NCBI GenBank assembly: GCA_964234715.1
Contig: OZ174281.1
Reading direction: 5' to 3' (one strand)
DNA: 64,000 nt
Source: Podarcis melisellensis
Lineage: Eukaryota
Part shown: one piece after another, positions 1,430 through 61,255 of the stretch
Position numbering within the stretch: the stretch's first letter is position 1
Layout of the letters: each line of letters starts with the position of its first letter
The notes under the pieces: generated by a model
Seen by the model: only the letters and a program-made list of their open reading frames with translations
What the model was told of the DNA's origin: nothing
Databases searched by the model: none
Position numbers and translations under genes: made by a program

Positions 1430-1643
1430 CAGTGGTGTAGCGTGGGGGGTGCAGGGGGGCCCGGCCGCACCGGGCGCAACATCTGGGGGTTAGGGTTAGG
1501 GGGCGCAAATCCACGGATTAGGGGGCGCAAATCCACGGGTTAGGGGGCGCAAATCCACGGGTTAGGGGGCGCAAAATCCACGGGTTAGGGGGCACAAATT
1601 ACTTGCCTTGCCCCGGGTGCTGACAACCCATGCTACGCCACTG
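1430..1643 (+). mobile_element. hAT-type MITE carrying TTAGGG units (copy 1, with internal 22-bp tandem expansion)
   Basis: TIR cagtggtgtagcgtggg / cccatgctacgccactg; perfect 8-bp TSD caccctcc (1422-1429, 1644-1651); internal gggggttagggttagggggcgcaaatccacgg repeats. Confidence 0.9.
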
Positions 1644-16384: not shown

Positions 16385-17739
16385 AGTCCAGAGGGTGCCA
16401 ACAGGGTGTTGGCCACCAACGCCAGGTATTCTGGAAGACCACTCCCATCCCTAAGCATGTTGGCTGGGGCTGAGGATTATGGGTTTGGCCCATGATCCAT
16501 GACCTAGTCTTTTGCCCTGTAGGTCCCACTGATTTGTTGCAACCCAGACTTTTGGCCAAAGGCCTATGCTGGCTGAGATGCTTTCAAATCCCCAAGGAAA
16601 GCACCTGTTATCTACACCTGGCTTTGTTAGACCAATTTTCCCTTCCTCTTACAACTGGCTTAGCAAGACCATTCTCCAACTCATTTAGGTGTAAACACAT
16701 TAGCATATACAAAGCTATTCAGCAGGGCTTAGGCCTCCTGGCTCCTATTTGGAAGCAGGTTCTGCCTATAGGGATACAGTGGTGGTGGTCTTTTGTAGCA
16801 TTTGATTCTGGGAAACACATAGATAACAGATCTGCCTTAAGGCAACTCAGAAAGCAATAAAGATTTCTTTAGAAGTCCTAGAACTCCTTGGGGTCACCAG
16901 CAGCTGGCAATGGCAGTTAACTCATGACTTCCCTATCAAAATATCAAACCCCCCTACCTTACTAGAAGAGGCTATAGGATGAAAGCCATACACTGAAAAC
17001 ACTGTGCACAGGAAATAAAAGCTCTCCGGGCAACAGAACACACACACACAGGAACACCAGGAAGCACAAATGAGAATTAGGGCTTGGGGTCGAAATCAGA
17101 TTGTGCTGTGCAAAACCCTTAAAACAGCAGCTACCTAATTCACGTAGTGATGGCAGATAAAAGGCACAAACTTATTCTCTGGTCTCAAATATTGTGTTGG
17201 AAAGAATGCTTGGATGTTGCTGCAGTTTTTTTTATAAAAAAAATAATCATTGGTTGGGTAACACATAAGAAACATTCAGTACTAGCGCTGGGAAAATGAG
17301 AGGTCCCCAGATGCTGGACTAGAAACTTACAGTAACCACAAACGGGAGGAGGAAAATAGAGCATGATTCATAGTTAGTATCTGCATACGAGGCTGCATAT
17401 AACTAGCTGTAAAGGGGACTCCGCCTCACCCCACCCTTCCAGCCCCTCAAAGAGGTCGGGTTAAGAGCGAATGGCAACAAGTAATCCGGCAACAATACAG
17501 CAAATGGCTTTTTGCACAATCAAATCCATACAGCCCCTCTCGCAGGGCACACCTAACCCATCCCTCACTCCTAGGAACATCCTCATAGGATACACACGCA
17601 TTCCATGCTCCTCCTCCATAGGAAGGTACATGCACCGCCACCACATTCTTCCAGCCTGCCTCACCCCCCCCCCCGGGATACCCAGGGGCGCCTCTTTTCT
17701 GTGCACCTTCCACGTCTCCCCTTCTTCCACCCATCGTAC

Positions 17740-20700
17740 TTCATCTGCGCGCACACACACTCCGATTCATCGACGACACGCTACGGGCGCGAGTTCTCAC
17801 CGAAAGCGTACGCCAGCGCTGAAACCCGGGTCTCCATGCATGCCCACTTCCTTTACATGCCCAACACCTGAAGTTCACCTCAGACCTGTCCGCTCTTGCA
17901 TGCACACGCACCCCGTTCGCCTTCCTCCTCTTTCGGGCGTATTCCCCAGCCTTCCCTTGGGCTGCCTTCTGCTCCTTCCCCAGGCACTCCTCGGGGTCTC
18001 TACACCCGAACCCGCTGCGCGGCAGCACCCTTTCCCGTGCAGACGCTCCTCCAGACCCCAACCCCGGAGCAGCAATGCCCCGGACAGAGCGTGTGTGGGG
18101 GGGGGGGGACCTGGCAAGGGCGAGAATGCAACGCACTTTTCACCCGGGGAAGAGGAGGCGCGCTTGCCGCCTCGGCCATCCGCGCGCAGGAACGAAGCAC
18201 GAGCGCCAGCCAGGGCAGCTGCCAGCCTCGCCCGCCCGCGCCCCCCCCTCGCCGCACCAGCAAAACACGCGCAGTCCGAAAAGGCGCTTGCAGGGATGCC
18301 ACGTCCCCGGAGCCCGCACACAGGCAGGGCATTCCGGGGCAGGGGCAGGCGTCGGGGCGGGCGGGGGGGGGCACACGAGCGAAGCGGAGTTCTCGCCACC
18401 CCCAGCACCCAACAAGTGGCAGGAGGCGAGGGGGCTTGGGTCCTGGCAGGAGCCCGACTACTTGCCCCCCTTTCTGATCCGGGAGGGGGCGCACGCAGCG
18501 CATCGGGGTGCAGCCATCGGGGGGAAGCCAGGCGTCGCCCACAAACGCCTCCCTGTCGTCGTCGTCCCCCCCGCTGCTTCTCGCCTGTAACGGGAGGGGG
18601 TATCAATGTGCGCGGAGCCCTCACTGCCTCCCCCCCCCCCGGGAGCTGCTTCCGATTTCGGGGGCGCTCCTGTCTCCGCAGATTGGAAAAGATTCATCGA
18701 GACCCCGATCCGTGAAAAAACAGGGTGCCGAAAAGGAGGGGCGCGCGCGGGGGGGAGAGAATGAATCGAATTGGCTCCGGGAGGGAGAGCAGCAACGGAG
18801 GCGCCGCAGCTCGCGGGGGGGGGGGGGCGCGAAGCAGCTGGATGCGGCGAGAGGAAGAAGGACCCGGCGCAGGACCGCAGGCGAGTCGCCCGCCGGCTGC
18901 AGCAAAAACTTGACCCCCACAAGCTGCCTACCAAGTATCGCCATCCTCGCCCCTCCACCCACCCCTCGCCCGTCCGTCTTCGGGGAGCTGCGCGGCTGCT
19001 CGCCCGCCGCTGCTCCCGCCACCCGCAGCCTCGAGCGGGCGCCTGCCTCGCTCGCTTCCCTCCAGCCCGGCGCCCGCATTCCGACACAGCCGCGAGCCGA
19101 GCGCGGTCCTCCGCCGCGGGGTCCGCCCTGGCCGCTTCCCGCCTGCCCGCCGCGCTTCCTTACTTCGCGGCGCCCGGGGCTTCCTCCTGGCTCGCCGCTC
19201 CTCGCCGGGCATCTTCGCCTCCCGCCGCTGCTCTCCGCAGCAAATCCGCCAGCAGCCGGGCTCTCCGAGCCCCCCGCGCCGTCGCGCTCCGCTCCAAATC
19301 CGCGCCGCTCCGTTCAGTCCCTTCCACCCGAAGGAAGCCCTCCCTCCTGCCCCGCTCGCCCGCGCCACGAGCCCAGCCAAGCAGCCGCTGCTGCCGGGGC
19401 GCGCGCCGAGCCGGGCTGTGTCCGAGCCGGAGCTGCTCTCTCGGTGTGTGTGAGGAGGAAGTGCAGGGGAAGCGCAGCCCAGGGATTGCATCGCCCCCCC
19501 CGCCCGCTCCTCTCGCGCGCGCGCGCCGCCGCCGCCTCCCTCTCCGCGCTCGCTCGCTCCCTCCCGGCTGGCCGCCTCCTCCTCCTCCTCCTCGCCGCCG
19601 TCCTCGCTGCCCGGGGAGAGGGAGGCGGAGCTCCGGCGCCTTGGCAGAGCCGGTGCCCAAGCCAAGCTCCGCGCGGAGGTGGCCGCAGCGCCAGCGACCC
19701 AGCCAGCCTCGCGTGCCTTAGCCGAGCCCAGCCGAGGAAGGGAACAAGCCCTCCCCGAGCGCCTTCGGGAGCATCATCGCGACCGGCGCGCCGCCTCGGG
19801 CCCCCTGTTCGCGGCCGCTGACTTGCCTGCTTGGGGGGAAGCGATGGGCAGCCCCGCGCTGCCCGGGGAATTCGCGGCGAGATGCCCGCCCGCCCGCCCC
19901 GAGGATTTGCAGCCCGTCGCTGCAGCTGCCCGAGCCGCGAGGTCGCGCGCTGGCGCCCGGCAGCAGGAGGCGTCCCACTCGCGGCGGCGGCGGCGGCCAC
20001 GGCCACTAGGGGCGCGCGAGGCCTGCTCCCCACGAGACGCGGACCAGGCCTGCGCGCCCGCCCGCCCGCCCGCCTGCCTGCCCTGCTGGCCGGAGCCGCT
20101 TGGAGCGCCGCCTGCCCGCCGTTCGCTCTCCCCGCGTGACTCCCGCTGACCTTGCCCCCGCCAGCCCCGCCGCGCGCCCTCCCCTCCCCCTCCTCCCCCG
20201 CTGTCCTCGCGGCCGGTTCCGGTGAGTCACCCGCGCGTCGCCGGCTGCACCTGCCGGGGGAGGAGGGAGCGAGCTGGGACTGCGCACCTGCCCAGCCGCC
20301 CGCCCTTCCCCCTCGCCGCCACTGCAGCAACCCCCGAGGGGGCTGGCCAGTGCCATGCCGATGCCCCTCGGGGATCGCGCGGCGGAGCTGCCCTCGGGAT
20401 CCGTCTCCGGAGAGCCGCTTCCGAGCAGGCGGCGACCCTCCCGCGGGCCCTTTGGGGCGGGCGGGCGGGCGAGGGGCTTCCAGGGAGAACTCCGGGCTGG
20501 CGAGGCCAAGATGGTTGCCAGCTGCCCCGGCATCCAGGGCGGCCGAGAAAACCGCGGGCACTCACACGCGGGGAAGCGGCTGCCGAGCGCCGGCTCCTGC
20601 TCTGCCCCTTTAAGCGGCGCGGGCCCCGCTCTGCCAGTGGTCCGGATTTCCAAGCTGGATTCTGGTCCTTTGCCAAGGACTGAGCGCTCGTTAACATTCA

Positions 20701-21000
20701 GCCTGGCGCTCCCGGTGCCAAGCTGCCAGGCTCCAGAGATCCCTGGCTCTTGGGCCCCTGCAGGCCGGCCGCGTCAGACAACTCAGCAGGCGCCTTGCGG
20801 AGCCCTCCCGGGGTGGGGGGCTGCCGGGCTGCCCTGCTGGCGAGCTCCCAAGTCCGCACGGTGTACTTTCTAGCATCGTTAGGAGTAGATTAGAGGCAGA
20901 GCCAACCTGTTAAAAACACGTGTTGCTTCTTTCCTGCAGCTCCAGATTTTTTACATGCTGCTCAGCTCTATGAACCTGTTGCGCAGCGCAGCCCCCGCGT
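17740..21000. promoter_or_regulatory. Large CpG island, probable promoter and first-exon region of an unidentified host gene(s)
   Basis: Very high GC and CpG density against a CpG-depleted background; (GCC)n/(CCT)n runs and GC boxes; splice-like motifs on both strands. Confidence 0.9.
18932..18944 (-). CDS. Candidate short first coding exon (MAIL+G) of a minus-strand gene
   Basis: aggATGGCGATACTTG|gtaggc: strong Kozak context followed by a GT donor inside the CpG island; gene not recognised. Confidence 0.3.
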
Positions 21001-27731: not shown

Positions 27732-27914
27732 NNNNNNNNNNNNNNNNNNNNNNNNNNNNNNNNNNNNNNNNNNNNNNNNNNNNNNNNNNNNNNNNNNNNN
27801 NNNNNNNNNNNNNNNNNNNNNNNNNNNNNNNNNNNNNNNNNNNNNNNNNNNNNNNNNNNNNNNNNNNNNNNNNNNNNNNNNNNNNNNNNNNNNNNNNNNN
27901 NNNNNNNNNNNNNN
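27732..27914. other. Assembly gap (183 N)
   Basis: Run of N. Confidence 1.
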
Positions 27915-29461
27915 GTGGCCATGCAGCTGTCCAAAGTGGTGGCTGTGGGCTGGTGTCCACCATTTAGTTTTTGCCCTAATGCCCAAGATGTAGTTTCAGC
28001 CCAAGGCACCTGGACTGGGGAAGCCACTACACAGGCATACAAAGACAGCTGCTATTGGTGGTAGAAAGTTTGTTTGTTTGTTTGTTTATTTATTTCTGCC
28101 TGCTGCTGCATCATCATCATCATCATCAGGAAGGAGTCACTTAGTGAAAGAGACCCCTTGCTGGCCACCATTGATCTTAAGAAATCCACAATAAATCCCT
28201 AGTTCTCCCACCCAGATTTGTGAGCCAAATGTCCTTGAGTCTGTCCACTTATAGCCATGCGAAACCCCTCTCAGCAGAAAGCAATACATGGGCACAGGCT
28301 TCAGTTGGCCAGGCTAAAGGGCTGGATGGCGGAAGGGAGGGAATGGCTTCCTGCCTTCATCCTTTCAACTCCTGCCATGCATTTGGGGCCATTGCAGGAC
28401 CTGAATTTGCTAACCGCTTCAGCTCTGAACCCATCAGAAGTATGTAGCATGTTGGAATCAGGGTTGCATTCATCCTCTGAGCTCAAGAAAAGGCCACCAC
28501 CATAGAGTTGAAACCAAAATGGAGCAACAGCAGCAGTTCTTAATAGCACAGCAGCGAATTCCTCCCACAATTAATAACCAGTAGATCTGCAAAATTGTAA
28601 CAGGATTCATGAGTTTCAACTGAAAATTCAAAGCACATTACAAAGAATTTGTGTGACAAACTGCTCATGATTCCAGTACCAGCCATGTTCCGCCTGCATA
28701 TGCCAAAGCAGACAGGCAGGTGGTGAAAAATGGTTTCTGGTTTAGTGAAGTGGTGTGTCAGTTTGTGTGTTTTTTCCCCTGCTGGATGGGAGGGTACTAT
28801 TTGAATTTTCAGTTAAGGTGCAAAAAATTGGTCAATCCTGCCAAAGAAACAGGTGGTTGTTGTTGTTTAGTAAACTCCTGCACACAGTATTTGCTCTCTG
28901 CAGTCATCTTGATCATGAAAAATGCATAACAAACTCTCTCTCTCTCCTCCCATCTCTCTCTCATTGCTCTGTGCACCGGATCTTCTCCAGTATAGCATCT
29001 TTGAATCCCATTAGTCTAGGTATTTACTCTATCTCTAAGATCACTAGGGAAAGGTGTTTAAATAAGATCACCGCAGTTCACAAACAGATACCGCCTCATT
29101 CTCTGAAATGCTGACACCTCTCATTATCTTTTATTCAAGATGTTCAGCCAGCTTTCTGTCCAATTGACAGCAATGCATCCATGCCAATGGATTTAATTTT
29201 GTGAGGAGGACTTAATGAGACAGAGCATTAAATTTCTTAAAGGACGTCTAAAGAGGAACATCCTACTGCATTCCTTTCCTCAGCCAATCAGGCTCAAATG
29301 CTTCTTTAGTTTGCTGTTTCATAAAAACAGTAAAGATTATTCTTACTTCCATTTAAATTGGAACTTCTCAAAAAGATCAGGTCTGTTCTGCTCATAGTTC
29401 TGATGCTGCTATTTGATGATTCATGATGCATAGGGTTCTGAGTTTGAGGGGCTTGTCTTTA

Positions 29462-29922
29462 TGATGCCTGAACCTCTTACCATCCCTGGAGAGCTGGACC
29501 CAGCAAGGGTTAAACTCTCAAGGAGGATCCCATTGTTGGACTGAGAGAATGCCCATAGTTACCATCTAAGTATGGTCATTAGACTGACAAGGGAAGCTGC
29601 TCTGAGCCAGAGGGCAAATGACCTTCTTCACCTGGCTGATATAAAGAAAGATAAGGGCAGAGAGCTGAGCTGGAAGGAGGCAAAAGCTAGGAGTCCAGAT
29701 TTCAGCTGGAATCCAAGGCTGTGCAGGTGGGAGAGGCAAGATGTTCTGGGGTGTTGTAAGCCCCTCCATCATATGATCACGTTATACATTTGTGTAAATA
29801 AACCACATATCATAAAGATGCCACAGTCTCTGCTCTCCCTCATTCCAAGGAAATGGAACCCTGGATTAGCGCCGGGAACCCCTGGACTCACACACTGCTC
29901 AGAGGTTGGGGGGCATGCAACA
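29462..29922 (+). mobile_element. Solo LTR
   Basis: TG...CA ends (tgatgc / gcaaca), TATA-like gatataaag, AATAAA at ~29797; homologous to 56416-57251. Confidence 0.75.
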
Positions 29923-29934
29923 ACACTCGCATAG

Positions 29935-30288
29935 GTAAAAGGTAAAGGGACCCCTGACCATTAGGTTCAGTCGTGGCCGACTCTGGGGTAACAGCGCTCA
30001 TCTCGCTTTATTGGCCGAGGGAGCCGGCGTACAGCTTCCGGGTCATGTGGCCAGCAGGACTAAGCCGCTTCTGGCGAACCAGAGCAGCGCACGGAAATGC
30101 CGTTTACCTTCCCGCCAGAGTGTTACCTATTTATCTACTTGTACTTTGAAGTGCTTTTGAACTGCTAGGTTGGCAGAAGCTGGGACCGAGCAACGGGAGC
30201 TCACCCCATTGTGGGGATTCGAACCGCCGACCTTCTGATCGGCAAGTCCTAGGCTCTGTGGTTTAACCCACAGCGCCACCCGCATCCC
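29935..30288 (-). mobile_element. Sauria/Squam1 SINE, full length
   Basis: tRNA-like head, conserved core, (ACCTTT)n tail; 13-bp TSD aacactc(g/a)catag. Confidence 0.95.
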
Positions 30289-31661
30289 AACACTCACATA
30301 GTAGCAGCCTTATTCCAGACCATGACACAGCTTCCATGCTAGTCCCACCCAAAGCCCAGGTGCAACTCCAGCAACAGAGACACTGTATTCTTGTCTCAAC
30401 TAGGGCCTAACCCTGCCCTGGACATTCTGTGTCTGAGGCAAAAAATGCAAAACATCCGCATTTTTTGATCATAGTACACAGTATGGCTGCCCTTGCAGAT
30501 TGTCCAGAAGGTGTGCTTGCTGTTTGGAGCTAACCAGTACCAACATATCACAGCTTTGTCTAAGCTGCTGGACTAGTGGATTATCTGCTACCAGACCAAG
30601 TTCTTAAGAAGTCCTAAATAGGTGTGGACCAAGTTACTCAAGAGACGGCCTCTCCCTTACACCTCTGCCTGGGTGAGGCCTTCCCTGAGGCAGCCCCTAA
30701 GTGCAGAATTTCCTCCCTGCAGAAGTGTCTCCAGCAGTTTCATTAAGCTGCCATTTCTCCATCTTTTCCACACAGCAGACTTACACTTCCTTGTTTTGCC
30801 TCTAGCTCTGAACACAGTCGAAAATCCCTTATTGTGATTTTTTTTACCTATCTCGAAAGCCTAAGCTCATTCTGAGCTTTAAGCCCCCCTGACACTCCTT
30901 CTGTTTCCTATACATGTCCCTTTAAAATATGAGATCATCAGAAAGCTCCTTTTGCACCCACCCAAGTTTTCTTGCTCTGCAGTTGTTGGCTATTGTGCTT
31001 TCAACATCCTACTTCTAACAACCTCCCAAGGCTAACAGATTTATTATGGCACAAGGTTTTGAGGACTACAGTCCACTTCATCGCTGCATTGAAGTGTTAT
31101 CCTGAGTTACAGGCATACATACACAGGGTTGTAAGCAGCAAGACCAGAGGGAACTGAAACGCAGAAAAGTACAGAAAGTGATAATTACGGTACGTAAACA
31201 TCAGTGGCAATTCACAAAGCAGCTTTTGATAATACAGACATTCCAGCATTGGTCAGCTAATTAACATATGAAGGATCTTGGAAAATTATTTGTCTCAATT
31301 CAATCCAAAAGTAATTGCACTGAACATCTTGTTCAGTTGTAATACAGAGGTTTCATGTTTAAGGTTCGTTTGCTCCTGGATGGCCACTTTAAGGTCATTT
31401 ATAGAGTGTTCTCAGAGGTTGAAATGTTTGCTCACTAGCTTTGGAAAATAGTCGTTTCTGATTTGTGTCTATTTATTACCGGTATTTCGCACAGAGACCA
31501 GTCTGTTTGTCTTAAGTAGAATGCAGAAGGGCATTGCTTGCAGATGATGGGCTTTATCATATTCAAAGAGAGGCAAGTAAAGGAACACTTGACGTTGTGG
31601 ATGAAATTATTAGGTCCTATACTGAGACAATCAATTTCTAGCACAATACCTGTGTTAATTA

Positions 31662-32032
31662 GGGACACGGGTGGCACTGTGGGTTACACCACTGTGTTGC
31701 TTGGGCTTGCCGATTGAAAGGTTGGCAGCTCAAATCCCCACGATGGGGTGAGCTCCCGTTGTTCGATCCCTGCTCCTGCCAGCCTATCAGTTCGAAAGCA
31801 CTTCAAAGTGCAAGTAGATAAATAGGTACCACTCCGGCCGGAAGGTAAATGGCGTTTCTTTGTGCTGCTCTGGTTCGCCAGAAGTGGCTTAGTCATGCTG
31901 GCCACAGGACCCGGAAAAACTGTCTGCGGAAGCGGACAAATGCCGGCTCCCTTGGCATGTAAAGCGAGATGAGCACCGCAACCCCAGAGTTGTTTGAGAA
32001 TGGACTTAATTGTCAGGGGTCCCTCTACCTTT
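31662..32032 (+). mobile_element. Sauria/Squam1 SINE, full length
   Basis: gggacacgggtggcactgtggg head; TSD acctgtgttaatt. Confidence 0.95.
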
Positions 32033-32865
32033 ACCTGTGTTAATTGGTTTACCAATGCCAGGATGTTTGTGTCATCAACAACTGTGTTGTGATTTGTCAC
32101 TGTTATTTGCTTAATTATCACTGTCTGTGGATTTCATTTCCCTCTGACCTCACTATTTACAATCCCACCCTCTGGAAAAAAAAGTGTGTCTATTATTGTA
32201 ACTGTAACTCAAACAACACTTTGTACTACACTGTAGTCCATGAAAGCTTTTGCCATCAAACACTTGTTAGGCCTCAAGATGCCACAAAACTCTTTGTTCT
32301 TTTTCTTGAATCTAAATACCCTTGGGGGGTGTACCGGCAACAGTAGCTGGAGGAAACGTTTCCTTAGACCCTAGTGGCATCCTTGGAAAGGAGAGCAAGC
32401 AAATTGGAGCGTTGCTGTTGCTGCCACCACTAACCGAGCTCACAATCTCAGAGACTGTCTGGAGCTATTGGACAAGTCATTGCAGAATCATGCTTTATTA
32501 TAAGTCTGAACAGGAGCAAGTACAGCATTAAGCAAGGATCAGCCCATAAGGATTAATTCAACACAGCGCTGGGGGATCAAAAACAGCAGGGGAGTGAAGC
32601 AGCAAATGATGTTTAGGACAGAGAGGCCAAAGGCACAAAATCAGACACACAGCCACAGGGCGCATGCAGACAGGAGAGATCTTCTGCTCCAGGGCAGAAG
32701 AAGAGAAGGAACAAGGGAGGAGCTGAGGAAACGAGGGTTGTGCACAAGAGTCTAAGCAGCACCTGGAGTAAAAATGGAAACTCCCAAACAATTGCATGAA
32801 TTCAGACCATTGTATTAATGGACCTTTGACAACTGAACTCCATCAACAGCAGTTTGAGACAAAGA

Positions 32866-33001
32866 GACCTAGTGTGGCACAGTGGTTAGAGTCTTGGTCT
32901 TAAAGGAGGGAGGCCTAACTTCAGATCTGTGAAGCTTTTGGTACAACATTGAACCAGCCACTACCTTTCTGCCTAATTTGCCTCACAGGGTAGTTGCAAG
33001 G
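32866..33001 (+). mobile_element. Old MIR/Squam3-like SINE remnant
   Basis: agtgtggcacagtggttagag head and cctcacagggtagttg tail. Confidence 0.55.
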
Positions 33002-34677
33002 CAGGCACAGCAATCAAAAACACAGGAAGTCAGCACAATTTAGGCTGCCCTGTCCCACCACCAGAGGTGGCAAGTTCCATTTTGCCACCTGAGGTGCGTG
33101 CCCCACACCCCTGCCAAAGCCTCCCTTACCTGAGTCGTGTGGTGGCACCCATGAAGCAGTCAACAACTGGCCATGAAGTTGTAACTGTAAGTGACACCCT
33201 TTTAACATTGGGGAGGGGGTTGCTGGTACTGTATACCCTTGAATACCCCCAGAAAAAAAGCACTGACTATTTACAGTCTGTTATAAAGTACATGACTTTG
33301 GCTTTTTTAAAAACAGCATCCTCCCAGTAGTAGGACTAGGGAGGACTTGAAGAACCTGTCCTAGCCAGAAGAGTTAGTACTGGGCTAGACACTCTAGCTC
33401 CATATAGAAGTGCCACCCTGTCCCCTCAGGGTCACAGGGGGTGGGGAGCCAGGGCTCTGGCCGGCTTTCTTGGATTTTGATGCCTCATCATCAGACGGCA
33501 GTACCTGGTTCCCACATGCAGCAGCTGTCATCAATGACAGAGAAGCTCTTTTCCTTTCCAAGATGACCATATCCTGTCCTGATGGAAGACTGAAGTCTTG
33601 GCCGCAGTCTGTCGGCCTCCCCCAGTGATTCCAATGATCACCCTCTCACTGGGGAAGTGTCCAGTTGCCCTTTGCTCTCACAGCACGACCAGAAGTCTAC
33701 CTATTGTGACTCCTTGCCTGAAAGGACCCTCTTCCTTCTCCCCCAGCCCTGGTTCGGGTTGAGTTTGAGCCCGCCATCATGACGCCAACTCAGCCTACGA
33801 AGCGCAGCCAGAAGCGGTTTCCGCACACAGTTATGCAGTAATATCCAAATCTGCTTACTGTCTGCCACTGTGATTGAAGAAGTTTCTGCAATAATGTATT
33901 AGCTAAAGCTTCCAGATTATCCCCGAAACATCAGCTTTAACAAAAGGGTAATGCCTCTTTAATCCCTGCATGATCCAGGTTCCAGTCTCTGCAGGACATT
34001 AATTCACAGCTAATACATGGATTCCCTGACAGTTTGCTTATATGGTTGTACAAGAGGCCCTGGCATGTCCAGTTGTCCCAATTGTAAGCTGCGCCAATGC
34101 CAGCCAAAGTCCTTCCCTCTCTTCTCATCATTTCAAGGTATTAGACACGAATCCTGCAGCCACTGAGAGTGAAAGGGGTCAGTGGGTGGCTGGAACACAC
34201 TTCCCAAACCTTTAGGATGTCAAGACCAAGTGCATGCACAAATTGTGATGCAGGGTTTTAACCACTTTGGCTCAGTGCAGACAGGGATTGGGCATATAGC
34301 ATTATTTATGTTCTCAAAAAATGGGAGTACAGATCCCAAATTCAAGAGCTACATACCCTTGATCATGGCCAGCTGGTTGAGAACAGCAGTCCACAAGTTT
34401 GTAGCTACATTCCTCATGGCAGCATTCATCAAGCCTTCCAGATGTTTCAGAGTGCAACTTTGATCAAGTACAGCTGGGAGCTCAAAACATCCCGTGGGCA
34501 CCAGGTTCGTTATTTATTTATTTTACAAAGTTATAAACTGCTTCACAGACTGAAGCCCGCAAAGTGGTATACCACGTAAAAATGAGATAAAATACAAAAA
34601 ATAAATAATAAAAAGGCAAGCTCTAAAACGATAAAGCACAAAATGACTGGGGAAACTTTCTTAAATAAAAATGTCTT

Positions 34678-35042
34678 GGTAAAGGTAAAGGACCCCTGAC
34701 AGTTAAGTCCAGTCACGAACGACTCTGGAGTTGCGGCGCTCATCTTGTTTTACTGGCCGAGGGAGCTGACGTTTGTCCGCAGACAGTTTTTCCGGGTCCT
34801 GTGGCCAGCATGACTAAGCCACTTCTGGCGAACCAGAGCAGCACACGGAAATGCCGTTTACCATCCTGCCGGAGCAGTACCTATTTATCTACTTGCACTT
34901 TGACGTGCTTTCGAACTGCTAGGTTGGCAGGAGCAGGGACTGAGCAATGGGAGCTCACCCCATCGTGGGGATTCAAACCACTGACCTTCCAATTAGCAAG
35001 CCCTAGGCTCTGTTGTTTAGACCACAGCGCCACCTGCGTCAC
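34678..35042 (-). mobile_element. Sauria/Squam1 SINE inserted into an L2 3' remnant
   Basis: Same core sequence; TSD taaaaatgtctt. Confidence 0.95.
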
Positions 35043-37139
35043 TAAAAATGTCTTTAGTGGGGGCCTAAATATCATGGCGCCACCTGCCTGGCTAATTTTA
35101 GCCAGTAACTTATTCCAGAGGGCTGACATCATGGGTTAAACTCATTGGATGGGATAGATTATGTAGACTCATTACAATTTGGGTCTGGACCTGACTTCAG
35201 AACTAAGTAAGCCTTGGGGTTTGCCCACACTTACCTTCCTCTGTGCTTTCTGGGCACAATCCATGCTTTAAAGCTTCATTTTTTCGCCCCAGAGCTTTTC
35301 TTGCAAAAACCTGCTCTTTATCGCTGAATAGGAACAAACGGCAATCTGTGGAGAAACCTAAAGGCAATGGTTACATTTCAGCTTTAAAGAGCAGGTTTTC
35401 ACAGAGAAAGCTTTGGGGCTAAAATAAATAAATGCAACTTCTCCTTTTCTTGCCCCAGCTGTATGTTTAAGTAATTAGCCTTTCGCTGAACCAGGTCCAG
35501 GGTGGGGTGGGTGGTCCCTGGGTTGGCTCAGGGTGGGTCAGCCTGATTGGGGACCCCTCCAGATCAGAGCCATGAGGCAGAGTGGGTGAGCTGTGTGCAG
35601 CCCCATTACAAATCAGAGAACTATCTGCATCTGAATGAGCACGCCCTTTTATTTGCACACATGAGAGTGTGCACAAAAGTGCAGTGCTAAGTGGTGCTCT
35701 GAAGAGCTTTTTAGAGCAGCCATTCTGCTCCACTTGATTTCAAAGTGCAAGATTTCTGCCCATGTTCTTTCCAGTATATCCTTTCCTCCCTAAAGGCTAG
35801 ACAACGACTTAAAAAAGAAAAATGAAAGCAAGCAGAGACTTCTAGGAAGCAGAACTCAACACGGAATATCACATTCTATATTGGGTGAAGCCAATATTTG
35901 TCCTTTTAGCCAGAAGTAAAAAAGGGCAGTTGTAGCAGCAGTAGTGGGAAAAGATCATACTTGAGAAAAAGAATTCTGGGCTAGCTTAAAATGTGATTTG
36001 TTCTGTTTGTGCTCTAGTTTTCACACACACACACACATTTTTAAAGCTTGATTTCTATTGTCCCAAGCCATAGAATCGTACTTGCTTTTAATTGTTTTGT
36101 TTTTAGTTGTTTTTAAGCAGGAGCTCTGTTCAAATTCTCTCACAGCTATGATATCCAACTCCCTCTGCCCAGTTTCTAACATGCTAGCACAGGCTCCCTG
36201 ATCACTTCAGTTTCATATTAAGCTACATATCATTATTATTTTTTTTAAAAAACACCCTGATGTCAAATAAGGGGTTGCTAGAAAACAGTCAGCAGGGGGA
36301 GAAACTCACTGCTTGCTAAATGAATGGTGGATGTTCATAAATTTTCTGTGGTGACTTTTAACTTAAATGCTCACAAAGTCTCCTCAGAGAGACAACCTTT
36401 CAATTTTAACTTGAAAGGAATCAATGAACTGAGATGTTTGCCTTTGCTGAAATCTGAAAATGGTACCCATGCCCAGAGCACCACAGCTAGTCTATCCTAC
36501 TTAATATAAAACCCAAATAGATCTACACATGATATTCACTTTTGCTGGTAGGTTATCCTGCTATGAAGAAACAGTCATGAGCTCCTCATGGGCATATGTT
36601 TTCCCATCTCATCCAAAATGTGGATGCTAACTGACATCTGAAGGCCTCTAGCTCCAATCCCAGAATGCTCTCTCCCTACCCTTCCTTGCCTGAACTCTGT
36701 TGTCCCTCAGCTCAGGCTGATGAAAAGAATGCCTCTTATTTTTTAACATATCTGTAATCACAGATCCACAGAGCCTGATCAACACCACACAGTAGAAACA
36801 AAATCATTCCTCTCTTCAAAGGGCTCAAAATCAAATATAGCTTCCTGGAAGCCTCCAAAACAGAGGCTACCGAGCCACATAGAATAGGCTCCCTACCAGT
36901 GGAAAGATCCTAGAGCAGGGGACCCCTCCAGATGTTGTTGGATTACCAGCATGCTCAGTGGTTAGGGGGTGCTGGGAATTATAGTCCAACAGTACCTGGG
37001 GGTGTGTGTCACAGATTTCCTACGTGAGGAAAGAATCATTTATTCTTTTGACCCATCAGAAACAGAGGGTGGGATTCAGCTAAGCAGCCCTACCAGCGGA
37101 AGTCCTGTGGAAGGACTTCCACCTGTGCGATGGGACTTT

Positions 37140-37376
37140 CTCCCGTCAAAAGCCTTACTGAAATCCAGATATACTACTACATCCACAGCATTCCCTTGAT
37201 CCACTAAGCTTGTAACTCTATCAAACAAAGAAATGAGATTGGTCTGGCATGACTTGTTTTTGAGAAACCCAGGCTGGGTCTTAGTAACCACAGCATTGTT
37301 TTCTAAGTGCTCACAGACTGACTGTTTAATCATCTCTTTTAGGAGCTTTCCTGGTACCAACGTCAAGCTGACCGGT
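37140..37376 (-). mobile_element. CR1 LINE RT fragment
   Basis: ORF 37076-37366: GFLKNKSCQTNLISLFDRVTSLVDQGNAVDVVVYLDFSKAFD. Confidence 0.9.
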
Positions 37377-37579
37377 CAGTACAGTATTTACCTGGGTCTT
37401 CTAAATCTATGCCATGTTTGAGAATTCATTGTCTATTTCATGGTAAACCCACAGATAATTTTTTGTATGTGCAACGAGATTTTACTGTGATACCCACAAA
37501 AGACTTCTAACAGCCAGCAGCACAATTACGTATATGCTCATTCATTCTCACAAGGGGACACCGCTTGGATTTTCCACCA

Positions 37580-37730
37580 AAATGAATGCAGAAAGTCCCA
37601 GGTTCAATCCGCAGCATTCCAGTTAAAAGAATCTCAAGCAGCTGGGCTAAAAAAGGCCTCTGCCTGAAACCCTGGAGAGATACTTCCATTCAGAGTAGAC
37701 TAGATGACAGAGTAAGGCAGTTTCATATGT
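37580..37730 (+). mobile_element. Degenerate tRNA-derived SINE
   Basis: B box cccaggttcaatcc; tail ctctgcctgaaaccctggaga...taaggcagtttcatatgt. Confidence 0.55.
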
Positions 37731-39123
37731 AAAACTATTCTTATCTTCATTGCTGCTTCTGTGATGTCAATAAAGCAAAACACAGTTCATTTTCCTTTTC
37801 CTACATCTTAGCAACGCTGTGGGACCTGCATTGCTTCCTAATTAGTTTCCTGGTGTGATTTAAGATGTTGGTTTTAATTTTATAAAGCTCTGAATGGTTT
37901 TCCTCAGAGGCCGACACCTCTCCTTTTGGTGTAATACCAAGGCTGCGAAGAGACTCGGAGGCCCTTAGGTGTGTTTAGAAATAGAATAAAGAGTGTTTAA
38001 AAGCAAGGGTGGATTGTATGTGTCTGTATTTGCTTTACATTATCATTTTCTTTAGCTAACACTAAAACTTTGGTGTAGACACATTAGTTGACTATAGGCT
38101 CTCTCCAGTGCATGAATAAGCTCAATACATCTGACATTTGTTGTTGACTTTACAAGAAAGGTCACCGAAGGTCAGCCAGTTCATGTGATTTATTTGTTAT
38201 GGAATTCAGGCTGTAGAGATATCATATGTAAAAGCTCCTCTAAAACAAATGTGCATGCAAAATTAGCTTATCAGGGTGAAGATTGGCCTAGAATCTTTCT
38301 CCACAATGTGTTAGTTTTGTGCATGCATATGCACAAGTTTGGTTTTGTGGGGACCAAAACCATGAATTCACTGGGTTTAACCACCATGACCCCATTCCAA
38401 ATTGGGGTCAGAGTTCTCTAGAATGAAATTGACCCTCATGTGTGATGCCCCTTCAACCACAACTGCCCCTTCCCTTAGCCAGCCCCAGATTCAGCCACTA
38501 TTGGCAAGGACACATGCAGGGCAGCCTCAAACAGATGCTCCTACCATCCACAGCAGCCATGATTTGAGGTGCTCCTGGGTGCTTCTGTGCCTGCTTAAGG
38601 CAGGATCTAAGACCTAATAGAGGCCCTGCTGCAAGGCCTCTACATTGCTGCTACCAAAAATGCTTTCGAAATGGAAACGGGGTTATGGCTGGACAGTGGG
38701 AGAAGCCCTCTGGGTGCTAACATGACAGTGATGACATAATTGGGTGAGGGCATGACATGGTCTTGATTATTAATGGTCCTAGTTTAAAGCAATTTAAAAT
38801 CCAAGCGCCCATTGAACTCTTGTCAAATGAATTAATTTTAATCAGGCTCATTAAGAATCAGACTTGGAGGAGGATACCCATCACTAAGGGCAAGGAAGCA
38901 TTTTCCGTGAAAAAATATTTAAACATTTCACACCCTACCTGCATCCCAAACAGATATATAGTGCAGCAACAAATACAGAACACAAACCTGCTGATCATGT
39001 GTTTCAGCTTTAGGTTACGTATACCTGGTTCAAAGAGATGATGGGGAGCTCTCAAGTTTAGAAAATCTGTTCACTTTCCATGTGTATATCATATGTACAC
39101 ACACACACAGCAGGAACTAAATA

Positions 39124-39376
39124 CAGTGGTGCCTCGCAAGACGAAATTAATTCGTTCTGCGAGGTTTTTTGTCTTGCGAATTTTTCGTCTTGCGAAGCAC
39201 AGATTCCCTGGGTATTAACAGTTTTAAGAAAATGGAAACAAACTTGCAAGACGTTTTCGTCTTGCGAAGCAAGCCCATAGGGAAATTTGTCTTGTGAAGC
39301 AACTCAAAAAACGAAAAACTCTTTCGTCTTGTGAGTTTTTTGTCTTACGAGGCATTCGTCTTGCGAGGTACCACTG
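39124..39376. mobile_element. Tc1/mariner(Tigger)-type MITE
   Basis: TIR cagtggtgcctcgcaagacga / tcgtcttgcgaggtaccactg; TA TSD; internal gtcttgcga repeats. Confidence 0.9.
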
Positions 39377-39386
39377 TATGGAAAGG

Positions 39387-40450
39387 TGTAATGGCACAGG
39401 TGTAGCACACCTTGATTTGTGACCAGTGATGTTTTGTATTCAGAGGAGAGCTGACGCTAATGTGGCGTAAGGAATGTGAGTCTAGTAACTCTTGATTATG
39501 TAAGTTTAGGAAGTCAGGTCCACGTAGAAGGCAAGGCTAGAAGCCAGAGCAGCTAAATATGACCTATTGTACACAATCATTTAATAATACTATTTCTTGT
39601 TCAATTTCTCTGACCTGCTCATCATTAAACAGAGGTAACATTACATGGTACTCGGAGTGGGGTCAGCATGGAAAGTAAGGGGCAGAAAACTGAGATAAAA
39701 AGATGTATCAAGGCCTCAAGAGAGTTGAGAGTGACAATGCAACAGAATCTTGGGAAATGTTTAAAGAAGGCTTTGCCATCTATATGCAAGCTAGAGGAAT
39801 GAATGAAAAGGACGCTCAAAAACCAACCACATATTTGCATATAGCAAGGCAGGAGGCAGCTGAAGTTTTCCGTGTCATGCAAATCAGCCAGAGGAGCAGG
39901 ACAGTTTTTCAGGCATTCTAAAGAAATTAAGAGGTATTGCATGCCCAAGAACTATGAATCTGTTATGCAAGGAGAAGAATCAGTAAAATAATTCCTTACT
40001 GACGTTAAACTGATGAGTCAGGCATACAACTTTGGGACCCTAACAGAGCCGTTGCTTTGAGTTCAGATAGTGTTGGGAGTTAGAGACAGCTAATTGGAAA
40101 AAAAAAAGACTTATGGAAACTGATCTGGCTCTAGAACGGGCAATCAGGCCTGCACAAGCTACGGCTGCTATAGAGGCTAGAATTCAAGTGGGGGACGGTG
40201 AGCATTTCAATTGATAGTTTGTGGAGGTGGAAGCCCCAGGAATCCTACATACAGCAGGAGGAGATTTTCACAGAAGAGACAGCCCTGGAGGGGAACGGCA
40301 CAAAGAGCCACAAAGAGCCAAGAACAAACCAGGGGCCAGATGAATGCACAATTCCTTTAAAAACAAATGGAATGCTACTGGAATGCAAGTTGGACAAAGG
40401 AGCACGGGTAAATGTCATCACTGCCACAATCCTTCAAAATCTTTTTTAAA
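39387..40450 (+). mobile_element. Decayed Ty3/Gypsy LTR retrotransposon 5' part (LTR 39387-39645, PBS, gag, protease remnants)
   Basis: LTR ends tgtaatg / cattaca; PBS tggtactcggagtggg (tRNA-Leu-like); gag-like ESWEMFKEGFAIYMQARG...LHIARQEAAEVF; protease-like KLDKGARVNVI (DTG>DKG). Confidence 0.8.
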
Positions 40451-40461
40451 ACCTCATCCCA

Positions 40462-40594
40462 TAAGGTTACTAGATTTTTTCCAATGAGTCCAGGGAAATT
40501 TTTCAACTTCAGTCGAATTCAGTGGATTTTGTCAGAGGACTGATTTGTAAATCTGGGGACTGTCCCCGGGAAACGGGGACGTCTGGTAACCTTA
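40462..40594. mobile_element. Short hAT-type MITE
   Basis: TIR taaggttactaga / tctggtaacctta; subterminal ggggac repeats; TSD not evident. Confidence 0.7.
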
Positions 40595-40609
40595 CATTAG
40601 AAAACAAAA

Positions 40610-41296
40610 TGTAAGGCTGAGGGTTTCCACTGGGAAGTAATTCCACACAGAGGGGTCTGGGGGTTGGAGATCAGGATTCCAAGAGCAGATAGATGCCATC
40701 TCATTTGTGACCGTGTATTGGAACACCACTTCTTGTTAACAACACTCCTTTGGGTCCGCAAGGAATGGGATGCACCCAAACTTCACCTTTGAGCTTTAGA
40801 AGGCTGGGGACCGGGCAGAGGAGGAATAGTGGAGACTGCCTTCCCGTCTGGACCCTTCCAGGGAGGAGGAAGAGGAGGACCATATAGATTTACAACAGCG
40901 GTTTGAGGGTGGTAGCAGCTCAGAGGCAGATGAGGGGGAAAGCTGGGAAATCAAGGGAAAGCCAGAACAACACCCAGCTGACATGTTGTCATTGGAAAGC
41001 ATTCCAGACCCCCCATCTCCCAGAACCTGGTGGGCCTTAAAAGTAGGAGAGCAAAGAGCTCAAAGACAGAGGGCACGTAGCAGCACCTGCAGAGGACATG
41101 ATGAGAATGATGAATGAGGTAGTGGGAGAGACAGGGTAGTGGAGGAGATTCACTCAGGACAGTACCATTATCCAAGAGGCTGGGTTCTATAGCCTCTCTC
41201 TGTAAAGATTGAAATAAAAAAGGAGGGTAAGAAACTTTCCCTTATCTTTATACTTTCATGGGAAACCAGCCAGGAAGTGCTGACAGCATCCTGACA
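40610..41296 (+). mobile_element. Probable solo LTR
   Basis: tgtaagg...cctgaca ends; AATAAA at ~41213; TSD not found. Confidence 0.5.
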
Positions 41297-41344
41297 TAGA
41301 GGGACCAGCCCAATATCATTTCTTTCTCAGTCTCATATGTAGCA

Positions 41345-41585
41345 CAGCGGAACCTTGGTTTTCGAGCATCTCAGAAGCCAAATGTTCTGGTTTTCAAACG
41401 CCGAAAACCCGGAAGTAATTGCTTCCATTTTTGAACATGCCTCAGAAGTCGAATGGCTTCCGAGGCGTGTTTATCAATTTTCTCCACTGAAATTGCTGAC
41501 TGCCCATTGTGCCTTGGTTGTCGAACATTTCGGAAGTTGAACGGTCTTCTGGAACGGATTACGTTTGACAACCGAGGTTCCACTG
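41345..41585. mobile_element. Tc1/mariner-type MITE
   Basis: TIR cagcggaaccttggtt / aaccgaggttccactg followed by TA. Confidence 0.8.
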
Positions 41586-42060
41586 TATTTGAATCCCATT
41601 GAGTCAGAATTAAGGTGAGCCACCCATGGCAGTTCAATCTTGAGTTTGCTATGGGGGGAAAAACCACCTCAGCAGGATTGGGAGGGATAGATGAAGTATG
41701 AGGAACGCAGCAGGGGAAACATCAGGAGAAAAACACTGAGCCTCACACAATGAAGAATCTTCGGAAATAAGTCTGAGAATGCCCAGCTAAAACTAGAAGA
41801 CTCCAAAGCACTGCTATTTTTTTTTAGATTCTTTAATTGGGGAATGGAGATTGCAAAAAGCAGGGACAGGTTCTGAAGGAGAACATTCCAGAGCAGATGA
41901 AGGCGAACAAGCAATGTGAGCACTAAGGTTCCTGTTCTTAAATCTCTGTCCCACCCTTCCTCCCAAAGGAGTCTACCATTAAGGAGCCTAACATAAGCAG
42001 TAAAGAGGCAACAGCCGATATGCTCTTGAAGCAGAACAGGAGATGGAGGAAGCATTTGAT

Positions 42061-42423: not shown

Positions 42424-42692
42424 ATGGAAGGAAGGGTGGGGTCTGGTTCTGAGATGGGCCCAGTGAGGCATGGATGCCTCAAAGGCATTTAGTGTCGGTG
42501 CAGAAGGAGCGTTGGCTACAGCAAGCAGTGCTACTTGCTCAATTATAAGTAATCCCAACCAGGTATTTATTTTAAATGTGGGTATTATTTATTTTGCACA
42601 GAAAGCAGCTTAATTTTTTTAAAAAAACAACAACTACAAAAACATAGTACGGTACACAATGATCACAAAACATTTAAAGCAGAACATATAAT

Positions 42693-47994: not shown

Positions 47995-48406
47995 CATGGG
48001 TAGGCAAACTAAGGCCTGGGGGCCGGATCCGGCCCAAATGCCTTCTAAATCCGGCCTGCGGATGGTCCGGGAATTACCGGTAGCATGTTTTTACATGAGT
48101 AGAATATGTGCTTTTATTTAAAATGCATCTCTGGGTTATTTGTGGGGCATAGGAATTCGTTCATTTCCCCCCCCTCAGTGGCGTAGCGTGGGGGGTGCAG
48201 GGGGGCTGGCCGCACCGGGCGCAACATCTGGGGGTTAGGGTTAGGGGGCGCAAATCCATGGGTTAGGAGGCGCAAATTACTTGCCTTGCCCTGGGTGCTG
48301 ACAACCCACGCTACACCACTGCCCCCTTTCAAAATATATTCCGGCCCCCCACAAGGTCTGAGGGACAGTGGACCCGCCCCCTGCTGAAAAAGTTTGCTGA
48401 CCACTG
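47995..48406 (-). mobile_element. hAT-Charlie-type MITE containing nested TTAGGG MITE
   Basis: Ends catgggtaggcaaact / agtttgctgaccactg; TSD ttaaatgc / ttatatgc. Confidence 0.9.
48176..48321 (+). mobile_element. TTAGGG-carrying hAT MITE (copy 2)
   Basis: TIR cagtggcgtagcgtggg / cccacgctacaccactg; flanks ccccccct / cccccttt. Confidence 0.9.
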
Positions 48407-48579
48407 TTATATGCCTTCACGTCCACCATGGCAACCAGCAGACCCAACCACATCACCTTGGCAGAGGCTGGCACGCAGGACATTGAACTGAAAGACCCTT
48501 GCCAGGCAAGCTCAGTCCCTGGATTACTACTTACTTGTTGATATATTTGGGGTGCGTGGGGTGTTAGGGGAGGGGTAGT

Positions 48580-52786: not shown

Positions 52787-52933
52787 CAGTGGTGTAGCGT
52801 GGGTTGTCAGCACCCGGGGCAAGGCAAGTAATTTGTGCCCCCTAACCCGTGGATTTGCGCCCCCTAACCCTAACCCCCAGATGTTGCGCCCGGTGCGGCC
52901 GGCCCCCCCTGCACCCCCCACGCTACGCCACTG
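52787..52933 (-). mobile_element. TTAGGG-carrying hAT MITE (copy 3)
   Basis: Same TIRs; ccctaaccctaaccccc core; flanks gcctatatc / gccatatc. Confidence 0.9.
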
Positions 52934-61107: not shown

Positions 61108-61255
61108 CAGTGGCGTAGCGTGGGTTGTCAGCACCCGGGGCAAGGCAAGTAATTTGCGCCCCCTAACCCGAGGATTTGCGCCCCCTAACCCTAACCACCA
61201 GATGTTGTGCCCGGTGCGGCCGGCCCCCCCCTGCACCCCCCACGCTATGCCACTG
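61108..61255 (-). mobile_element. TTAGGG-carrying hAT MITE (copy 4), inserted in the SNRPD3 retrocopy 3'UTR
   Basis: Same TIRs; flanks aaaccagc / ccaccagc. Confidence 0.9.

What the first reader, a model, noticed from the sequence alone, without database searches (positions are those of the whole stretch)
1430..1643. Young hAT MITE family that disperses telomeric TTAGGG / G-quadruplex modules (4 copies in 64 kb)
Seen: four ~146-148-bp elements (1430, 48176, 52787, 61108; copy 1 is longer) with 17-bp TIRs (CAGTGGCGTAGCGTGGG), 8-bp TSDs and retained CpGs. Each has the core GGGGGTTAGGGTTAGGGGGCGCAAATCCACGGGTTAGGGGG or a close variant: three TTAGG(G) units and at least four G-tracts with TTA loops. 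Established: TTAGGG is the vertebrate telomere repeat bound by TRF1/TRF2 (half-site TAGGGTT) and by HMBOX1/ZBTB48, and G3-TTA arrays fold into G4. Inference: a cut-and-paste transposon is seeding short interstitial telomere-like, shelterin-bindable G4 sites genome-wide (four copies here implies many thousands). This could protect or target the element, supply regulatory sites, or seed interstitial telomeric sequence in lizards. I do not recognise a described family with this structure.
Basis: partly seen in the sequence, partly recalled or inferred. Interest (0 to 1): 0.8.

Follow-up and report, generated by a model that had tools for sequence, protein, structure and literature searches.

The report
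Abundant young lizard MITE with telomere-like core
A real, very abundant and recently mobile miniature hAT-type DNA transposon carries two TTAGGG telomere repeats inside a duplicated 22-base internal unit, but nothing testable here shows that this motif acts as a telomere-protein or G-quadruplex module.

Summary
Four copies of a 146-148-bp element lie at the stated places; copy 1 is 214 bp. Each has 17-bp inverted ends, 8-bp flanking duplications and 92-96% pairwise identity. Nearly all differences between copies are CpG decay.

New evidence shows it is mobile and young. Contigs of three related species (about 2% diverged) lack copy 3, and the missing length fits element plus 8 bp. Copy 2 sits inside another hAT-like MITE whose other copies lack it. 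Summed contig depth and window density both suggest roughly 10^4-10^5 copies, and all four species carry the family.

The telomere/G4 reading is not supported:
- The TTAGGG units belong to a tandemly duplicated 22-bp internal unit, which has expanded to 4.8 units in copy 1.
- Each copy holds exactly one TRF-type half-site (YTAGGGTTR).
- No copy has a canonical G3N1-7 quadruplex motif. A G4 needs an 11-13-nt loop and is only marginally favoured in folding.
- Two of the four non-CpG substitutions fall in the G-tract/TTAGGG units.

Verdict: a new member of a known kind, a non-autonomous hAT MITE. The telomere-like core is most likely incidental or related to transposase binding. Dfam and Repbase could not be checked.

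The parts
1430..1643 (+). MITE copy 1, 214 bp. TIRs at 1430-1446 and 1627-1643. Perfect 8-bp TSD CACCCTCC at 1422-1429 and 1644-1651.
1493..1599 (+). Internal tandem array of the 22-bp unit GGGTTAGGGGGCGCAAATCCAC, 4.8 units and 94% matches. It accounts for the extra 66-67 bp of copy 1.
   Evidence: TRF score 191; alignment
48176..48321 (+). MITE copy 2, 146 bp. Flanking 8-mers at 48168-48175 and 48322-48329 match 6/8 in a poly-C context. It is nested in another hAT-like MITE at 47995-48406.
   Evidence: In one search, many paralogous contigs of the host repeat skip from 48166-48174 to 48327-48332 (156-168 bp).
52787..52933 (-). MITE copy 3, 147 bp. Flanking 8-mers at 52779-52786 and 52934-52941 match 6/8. 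The copy is absent at the orthologous site in three related species.
   Evidence: In one search table 8, records 12, 19 and 28 run to 52787 and resume at 53214 with 15 letters between. The 411 extra letters equal 147+8 (MITE) plus 256 (adjacent SINE with its duplication).
61108..61255 (-). MITE copy 4, 148 bp. Flanking 8-mers at 61100-61107 and 61256-61263 match 6/8. It carries GGTGG in place of the first G5 tract.

Best explanation
This is a high-copy, recently active, non-autonomous DNA transposon (MITE) of the hAT type in a lacertid-like lizard genome.

Inferred mechanism: a hAT transposase encoded elsewhere recognises the 17-bp inverted ends, and probably short motifs just inside them. It excises the roughly 147-bp element and reinserts it with an 8-bp target duplication.

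The interior is about three tandem, degenerate copies of a 22-bp G-rich unit (GGGTTAGGGGGCGCAAATCCAC). The unit itself contains GGGTTAGGG. One extra 6-bp GGGTTA step, most simply explained by slippage, made the perfect (TTAGGG)2 dimer. The same instability expanded the array in copy 1.

The telomere-like motif is therefore a by-product of this internal repeat, carried passively to tens of thousands of sites. It is not a selected shelterin or G-quadruplex module. After insertion the copies decay as ordinary methylated neutral DNA, mostly by CpG to TpG/CpA changes.

Shown here: copies, TIRs, TSDs, an orthologous empty site, a nested insertion, abundance and the internal repeat structure. Inferred: hAT transposase dependence, the slippage origin of the dimer, and the lack of a telomeric function.
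For: - TIRs: 8 hits against 0.08 expected, pairing into four elements.
- Pairwise identity is 92-96% and there are no fragments.
- The terminus CAGTG fits the hAT YARNG motif, and 8-bp TSDs are the hAT criterion used for lizard hAT families (PMC3014272).
- TSDs: copy 1 is 8/8; copies 3 and 4 start their match exactly 8 bp from the end.
- Copy 3 has a precise empty site in three related species, and the arithmetic fits 147+8 bp.
- Copy 2 is nested in another MITE whose paralogues lack it.
- Summed contig depth on a MITE-only bin is about 3.4 million against about 100 for single-copy sequence in the source species. The ratios are similar in three relatives. Window density independently implies about 10^5 copies per 1.5 Gb.
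- Internal direct repeats have 22-bp spacing, and a third partial copy is present.
- Eleven of 15 substitution events are CpG transitions. Non-CpG divergence is about 0.8%, below the roughly 2% divergence between species.
- There is one YTAGGGTTR per copy, no G3N1-7 motif and only a marginal G4 gain.
- hAT transposases are known to bind short repeated subterminal motifs (PMC3143072).
Against: - No autonomous partner or transposase was seen, so the hAT assignment rests on end signatures only.
- Three of the four TSDs have two mismatches each. In copies 3 and 4 they lie next to the same end, which is odd for such young insertions and unexplained.
- The four target sites do not fit the common hAT nTnnnnAn preference.
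- Four copies give almost no power to exclude selection on the TTAGGG units.
- G4Hunter scores of 1.9-2.3 and relaxed (loop up to 12 nt) motifs mean G4 formation is not excluded.
- The depth-based copy number is explicitly not a measurement.
Confidence: 0.8

Rival explanations
1. One reading: the TTAGGG/G-tract core is a functional module. It is bound by shelterin-type proteins and/or folds into a G4. Selection keeps it because it protects or targets the element, or supplies regulatory or telomere-like sites to the host.
For: - A perfect TTAGGGTTAGGG is invariant in all four copies and occurs nowhere else in the window.
- G4Hunter peaks reach 1.9-2.3, and relaxed G3N1-12 motifs occur in every copy.
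- A three-layer G4 using the TTAGGG tracts appears in the minimum-energy fold of copy 3.
- TRF2 association with non-telomeric G4 promoters has been reported (PMC11677240, listed; only title and abstract seen).
Against: - There is only one YTAGGGTTR half-site per copy, even in the expanded copy 1.
- There is no canonical G4 motif, and the strongest G-propensity lies beside the TIR rather than in the telomeric part.
- The G4 energy gain is at most 2.5 kcal/mol for the telomeric G4 and zero in copy 1.
- Copy 2 has TTAGGA and copy 4 has GGTGG in these units, which is 2 of the 4 non-CpG substitutions.
- Invariance of non-CpG columns is expected anyway at 0.8% divergence.
- The motif is explained by a duplicated 22-bp unit.
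Confidence: 0.07
2. The 22-bp units, or the shared GGGCGCAA(A)T part of them, are subterminal binding sites for the mobilising hAT transposase. They are repeated because multiple sites favour synaptic complex formation. The TTAGGG is an accidental part of, or neighbour to, that site.
For: - hAT transposases (Herves; also Ac, Tag1 and Tol2 by citation) bind short repeated subterminal motifs (PMC3143072).
- The motif GGGCGCAA recurs three times in direct orientation at 22-29-bp spacing.
- An unrelated metagenome contig, L001, shares the left 34 nt plus a GGGGGCAAAT and an ATTACTT block, but not the TTAGGG stretch. This suggests the shared blocks are the conserved end features.
Against: - The units lie in the middle of the element and all in one orientation. 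They are not mirrored at both ends as in Ac.
- There is no transposase to test.
- The L001 similarity is short and its organism is unknown.
- Copy-number variation of the unit (1.8 against 4.8) looks like neutral minisatellite behaviour.
Confidence: 0.3
3. The element belongs to another superfamily that also makes roughly 8-bp duplications (P, Merlin or a short-TSD Mutator) rather than hAT.
For: - No transposase was seen.
- The target sites do not match the nTnnnnAn hAT preference, and three TSDs are imperfect.
Against: - The terminus CAGTG fits the hAT YARNG motif and resembles many lizard hAT TIRs that begin CAGTG/CAGGG (PMC3014272).
- The 17-bp TIR length is typical of hAT.
- The host element of copy 2 has a similar CAGTGG terminus and an 8-bp TSD.
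Confidence: 0.07
4. The TTAGGG dimer was written into a master copy by telomerase during repair of a break, as proposed for short interstitial telomeric sequences. It was then amplified by transposition.
For: Short ITSs of 2-25 repeats are widespread in the human genome (review PMC6410037).
Against: - Only 6 bp distinguish the dimer from the GGGTTAGGGGG present in the other units.
- The array is demonstrably slippage-prone.
- The other TTAGGG units lie at 22-bp spacing as part of the unit.
Confidence: 0.04

Closest known systems
Non-autonomous hAT families of lizards, e.g. hAT-N1_AC (135 bp) and the other 31 hAT-N/hobo-N/SPIN_NA families of Anolis carolinensis (PMC3014272)
   Same: - Small size and no coding capacity.
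- Short TIRs beginning CAGTG/CAGGG (the YARNG motif) and 8-bp TSDs.
- Copy numbers in the thousands or more.
- Low divergence from consensus, which indicates recent activity.
   Different: - The 17-bp TIR CAGTGGCGTAGCGTGGG is not among the TIRs listed there.
- The interior is a G-rich 22-bp tandem unit holding a (TTAGGG)2 dimer.
- The crude abundance estimate of 10^4-10^5 is at or above the largest Anolis family.
Short interstitial telomeric sequences (s-ITS; review PMC6410037)
   Same: Two perfect tandem TTAGGG repeats at internal, non-telomeric positions. The review already lists transposition by mobile elements as a possible route of spread.
   Different: - Here the repeat sits at a fixed position inside a TIR/TSD-bounded element.
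- It is at the minimum length of two repeats.
- It arrives with the element, not by break repair or chromosome fusion.
Subterminal transposase-binding repeats of hAT elements (Herves CG/AATTCAT; Ac, Tag1, Tol2; PMC3143072)
   Same: Short motifs repeated inside the ends of a hAT element.
   Different: - Binding was not tested.
- The units are central and all in one orientation.
- The motif sequence is unrelated to the described ones.
Transposable elements that carry G4-prone sequence, e.g. plant LTR retrotransposons, the L1 3'UTR and SVA (my knowledge of the literature, not checked here)
   Same: A mobile element that spreads strand-asymmetric G-runs with a high G4Hunter score.
   Different: - This is a DNA transposon.
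- It has no canonical short-loop motif.
- G4 formation is only a prediction.

Membership tests
hAT superfamily, non-autonomous element (MITE) | 8-bp target site duplication | tested here: met
   Copy 1 is 8/8. Copies 3 and 4 start their match exactly 8 bp from the end, and copies 2-4 match 6/8 in the 8-bp register. The extra length at copy 3's empty site is 147+8. The mismatches remain unexplained.
hAT superfamily, non-autonomous element (MITE) | Terminal motif YARNG and short TIRs (about 10-25 bp) | tested here: met
   The ends begin CAGTG, and the TIR is 17 bp at 94-100% complementarity. The criterion is as stated in PMC3014272.
hAT superfamily, non-autonomous element (MITE) | Mobilised by a transposase with hAT catalytic and dimerisation domains that shares the TIRs | not testable with these tools
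   The window has no TIR hit other than the four copies, and the eight long ORFs scanned gave no hAT domain. The host genome cannot be searched.
hAT superfamily, non-autonomous element (MITE) | Evidence of mobility: empty sites, high copy number, no ORF, under 800 bp | tested here: met
   There is an orthologous empty site in three species and paralogous empty sites for copy 2. Summed depth is 10^4-fold or more above single-copy sequence. The element is 146-214 bp.
Interstitial telomeric sequence (short ITS) | Tandem perfect TTAGGG repeats (2 or more) at an internal site | tested here: met
   Each copy has exactly two perfect repeats, plus 1-4 isolated TTAGGG or TTAGGG-like units.
Interstitial telomeric sequence (short ITS) | Origin by telomerase-mediated break repair or chromosome fusion | tested here: not met
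   The repeat is at a fixed position in a TIR/TSD-bounded element and forms part of a 22-bp tandem unit.
Canonical G-quadruplex motif | Four G3+ tracts with loops of 1-7 nt | tested here: not met
   There are 0 matches in all four copies. The relaxed 1-12-nt loop motif does match, and the G4Hunter maximum is 1.9-2.3. The G4-aware fold gains 0-2.5 kcal/mol for the telomeric G4.
TRF1/TRF2 (shelterin Myb) duplex binding site | Two YTAGGGTTR half-sites for the homodimer (criterion from my knowledge of the literature) | tested here: not met
   There is exactly one YTAGGGTTR per copy, including the expanded copy 1. Actual binding is not testable here.

The most novel reading that the evidence does not exclude
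The telomere-like, G-rich core is a functional cargo. Tens of thousands of MITE copies would form a dispersed network of weak TRF/TZAP/HOT1 or G4 sites. These could influence chromatin or replication, act as seeds for de novo telomere addition, or give rise to interstitial telomeric arrays in lacertid lizards. The core would be retained because it favours the element's spread.
Probability: 0.06. Interest if true: 0.65.

Novelty: new member of a known kind. Interest (0 to 1): 0.3.

Why it matters
As it stands, this is a well-behaved example of a recently active, extremely abundant hAT MITE in a lizard. It includes a clean lineage-specific insertion, which makes the family useful as a presence/absence marker. 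It also indicates that a hAT transposase was active within roughly the last 1% of sequence divergence.

The family probably accounts for most (TTAGGG)2 dimers in this genome. That is worth knowing for anyone counting short interstitial telomeric motifs or designing telomere probes in lacertids. A 12-bp dimer is too short to matter for FISH or qPCR (inference).

If the core were shown to bind telomere proteins or to fold in vivo, this would be a natural system in which a DNA transposon distributes telomere-like sites. No present evidence points that way.

Tried and rejected
- Rfam scan of the whole window: no family matched, so there is no sign of a small-RNA origin.
- DNA fold of the element: only the TIR stem is stable (z = -1.7). 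It is not a hairpin-type MITE.
- Literature: six topic or sequence-string searches found no description of this family or its TIR. Two further searches for SINE sequence strings gave no sequence match.
- Exact-pattern scans: the core pattern found nothing in metagenome or viral contigs. The TIR pattern found nothing in prokaryotic genome contigs and one metagenome contig, L001.
- L001 shares about 34 nt of the left end and two short blocks. It has no TTAGGG core, no second TIR and no Pfam domain. It is a weak lead to a related element in an unknown eukaryote and is not used as support.
- PMF1 route to orthologous loci: the PMF1-like ORF in the window proved to be a processed pseudogene. The PMF1 loci fetched from Podarcis lilfordi, P. 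muralis, Lacerta agilis and Zootoca vivipara (L002-L005, about 98 kb of one orthologous locus) are therefore not orthologous to the window. They contain no copy of the MITE. This says little about the family's distribution.
- Earlier-findings look-ups by place and by sequence were blank.
- Per-site variation of genome-wide copies could not be read. The MITE positions were among the rows not shown.
- Dfam and Repbase are not available here, so whether the family is already catalogued could not be tested.

Full report
**Observation**

The hits pair up as the inverted ends of four elements: 1430-1643 (+), 48176-48321 (+), 52787-52933 (-) and 61108-61255 (-). blastn with short words finds only these four. 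Pairwise identity is 92-96% and there are no fragments or solo ends.

The alignment shows that copy 1 is longer only because a 22-bp unit, GGGTTAGGGGGCGCAAATCCAC, is present 4.8 times in tandem at 1493-1599. The other copies have about 1.8 units plus a third, partial copy of its GCGCAA part.

The perfect dimer TTAGGGTTAGGG occurs once in each copy and nowhere else in the 64 kb.

**Flanks**

In a common orientation, copy 1 has a perfect 8-bp duplication, CACCCTCC. In copies 3 and 4 the match begins exactly 8 bp from the end but breaks down in the 2-3 bases next to the same ('left') inverted end. Copy 2 lies in a poly-C run, where a length change could explain the discrepancy. Counted in the 8-bp register, copies 2-4 match at 6/8 positions. 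Six or more matches out of eight has a chance probability of about 0.004 per site, so the duplications are real. The mismatches in such young copies are unexplained.

**Mobility and age**

Public runs of the source species (organism A) and of three relatives (B, C, D) were laid on 47600-53500. The relatives differ from the window by about 2.0-2.3% in unique sequence: 51-58 differences over about 2,560 aligned letters.

In each relative one contig runs through the unique sequence up to 52787 and resumes at 53214, with 15 letters in between (records 12, 19 and 28). The window therefore has 411 extra letters. These are exactly:
- the 147-bp MITE plus 8 bp; and
- the 256 bp between two TGTAG copies that bracket a tRNA-derived SINE lying 21 bp away.

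So copy 3, and independently the SINE, inserted after organism A split from B, C and D, or else they are polymorphic.

Copy 2 lies inside another MITE at 47995-48406. That element has termini related to CAGTGGTCAGCAAACT and flanking TTAAATGC/TTATATGC. Many contigs from other copies of this host element skip 156-168 bp across copy 2 (table 5). These act as paralogous empty sites.

Among the four copies, 11 substitution events are CpG transitions and 4 are not. There is also a one-base length difference in a G-run. Non-CpG divergence from the majority sequence is about 0.8%, while about a quarter of the CpGs have decayed. This is what neutral, methylated DNA of that age should show, so the retained CpGs indicate youth and not protection.

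**Abundance**

The bin 52722-52918 contains only unique flank and MITE. Its summed contig word depth is about 3.4 million in the source species, against about 100 in single-copy bins. The ratios in the three relatives are similar (about 28,000-45,000 before correcting for the MITE fraction of the bin). The tool warns that this is not a copy number.

Window density gives an independent crude estimate. Four copies per 64 kb, with about 1.3-1.5 Gb of contigs per run, extrapolates to the same order of 10^4-10^5.

An earlier unchecked note of this scan (s1-494089) reports two insertions of what appears to be the same 146-letter element at another locus of this genome.

**Host**

The window is CpG-depleted (o/e 0.37). 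It holds tRNA-derived SINEs, one of which matches a SINE in a Podarcis locus at 92.5%.

It also holds an intronless PMF1 copy. All five exons are contiguous at about 57418-58771 (-). The closest matches are lacertid PMF1 genes: Podarcis at 91% in the last exon/UTR, Lacerta at 87.5% and Zootoca at 84.6%. The species was not identified.

**What it is**

The features are small size, no coding capacity, 17-bp TIRs beginning CAGTG, 8-bp duplications, very high copy number and low divergence. These are the criteria used to assign lizard non-autonomous families to hAT (8-bp TSDs and YARNG termini; PMC3014272). That paper lists 32 such families in Anolis, 135 bp and longer, with up to about 12,000 copies. 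None has this TIR.

No autonomous partner is in the window, so the superfamily call rests on end signatures alone.

**The telomere/G4 inference**

Five points count against it.
1. Each copy has exactly one YTAGGGTTR, even copy 1. The other units read TTAGGGGG. From the literature as I know it, TRF1 and TRF2 bind as dimers to two such half-sites.
2. No copy contains four G3 tracts with loops of 1-7 nt. Three tracts are linked by TTA, then comes an 11-nt spacer. With loops up to 12 nt the motif matches, and G4Hunter peaks reach 1.9-2.3. The higher peak, however, is the G-run pair just inside the left TIR and not the TTAGGG part.
3. A G4-aware fold of the single strand places a three-layer G4 on the TTAGGG tracts in copy 3 and partly on them in copy 2. 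The gain is only 1.1-2.5 kcal/mol over the hairpin fold, and zero in copy 1. The larger gain in copy 4 comes from a two-layer G4 beside the TIR.
4. The TTAGGG units are accounted for by the 22-bp tandem unit. The dimer differs from the other units by one extra GGGTTA, which is most simply explained by slippage in an array that demonstrably changes length.
5. Two of the four non-CpG substitutions fall in these units: TTAGGA in copy 2 and GGTGG in copy 4. A further G-to-A change occurs in the expanded array of copy 1.

Four copies give little statistical power, but there is no hint of special conservation.

**A weak lead**

A TIR pattern scan found one metagenome contig, L001, from an unknown eukaryote with CpG o/e 0.86. 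It shares the left 34 nt of the element and, further in, a GGGGGCAAAT and an ATTACTT block, but lacks the TTAGGG stretch.

If this is real homology, the conserved end features are the TIR, the adjacent G-runs and the GCAAAT block, and the TTAGGG-bearing repeats are a lineage-specific elaboration. This fits the view that parts of the unit are transposase-binding subterminal motifs, as known for Herves, Ac, Tag1 and Tol2 (PMC3143072). It is too thin to rely on.

**Comparison and verdict**

The element is a new member, as far as the searchable literature shows, of a well-known kind: lizard hAT MITEs. The idea that mobile elements can spread telomeric repeats is already stated in the ITS literature (PMC6410037).

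The finding is real and the element is nicely documented as recently mobile. The reading that made it interesting is not supported by anything testable here, and several tests go against it. The functional reading keeps a small residual probability.

Noticed in passing
window 52779-52786/52934-52941, 61100-61107/61256-61263, 48168-48175/48322-48329: In three of the four copies the 8-bp target duplication has two mismatches. In copies 3 and 4 they lie in the 2-3 bases next to the same ('left') inverted end. Copy 3 is younger than the roughly 2% species split, so ordinary mutation is an unlikely cause. Possible causes are imprecise gap repair, carried-over donor bases or assembly error.
   Followed up: partly
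window 47995-48406: A second hAT-like MITE, about 258 bp without its insert. Its termini are related to CAGTGGTCAGCAAACT and its flanks are TTAAATGC/TTATATGC. It is very high in copy number in all four species and hosts MITE copy 2 as a nested insertion.
   Followed up: partly
window 52963-53213 (-): A tRNA-derived SINE with an (AAG)n-type tail, bracketed by TGTAG. It is absent together with MITE copy 3 from the orthologous site in three related species, so it is a second lineage-specific insertion 21 bp away.
   Followed up: partly
window 49870-50219 (+); further copies near 29938-30288, 55426-55774, 56536-56888: A tRNA-derived SINE ending in (CCTTTA)n, with by far the highest summed depth in the laid stretch. 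Copies are 90-93% identical to one in the Podarcis lilfordi PMF1 locus. From memory it resembles Squam1-type SINEs; this was not verified.
   Followed up: no
window ~57418-58771 (-): A processed (intronless) copy of PMF1 (Nnf1 domain). All five exons are contiguous, at 79-98% identity to lacertid PMF1 exons. The reading frame is lost after about residue 115 of the PMF1 part, so it is probably a pseudogene.
   Followed up: partly
window ~17500-21000: A large CpG island (73% G+C over 18-20 kb) with many long ORFs on both strands. None of the four ORFs scanned from this island has a Pfam match. The gene to which it belongs was not identified.
   Followed up: no
L001 1480-1603 (-), metagenome contig Ga0209628_10175246: An unknown eukaryotic contig with CpG o/e 0.86. 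It carries an element end that shares about 34 nt with the MITE's left end, plus two short internal blocks. This may be a related hAT family in a distant organism.
   Followed up: partly
window 27732-27914: A run of 183 N (assembly gap or masked).
   Followed up: no
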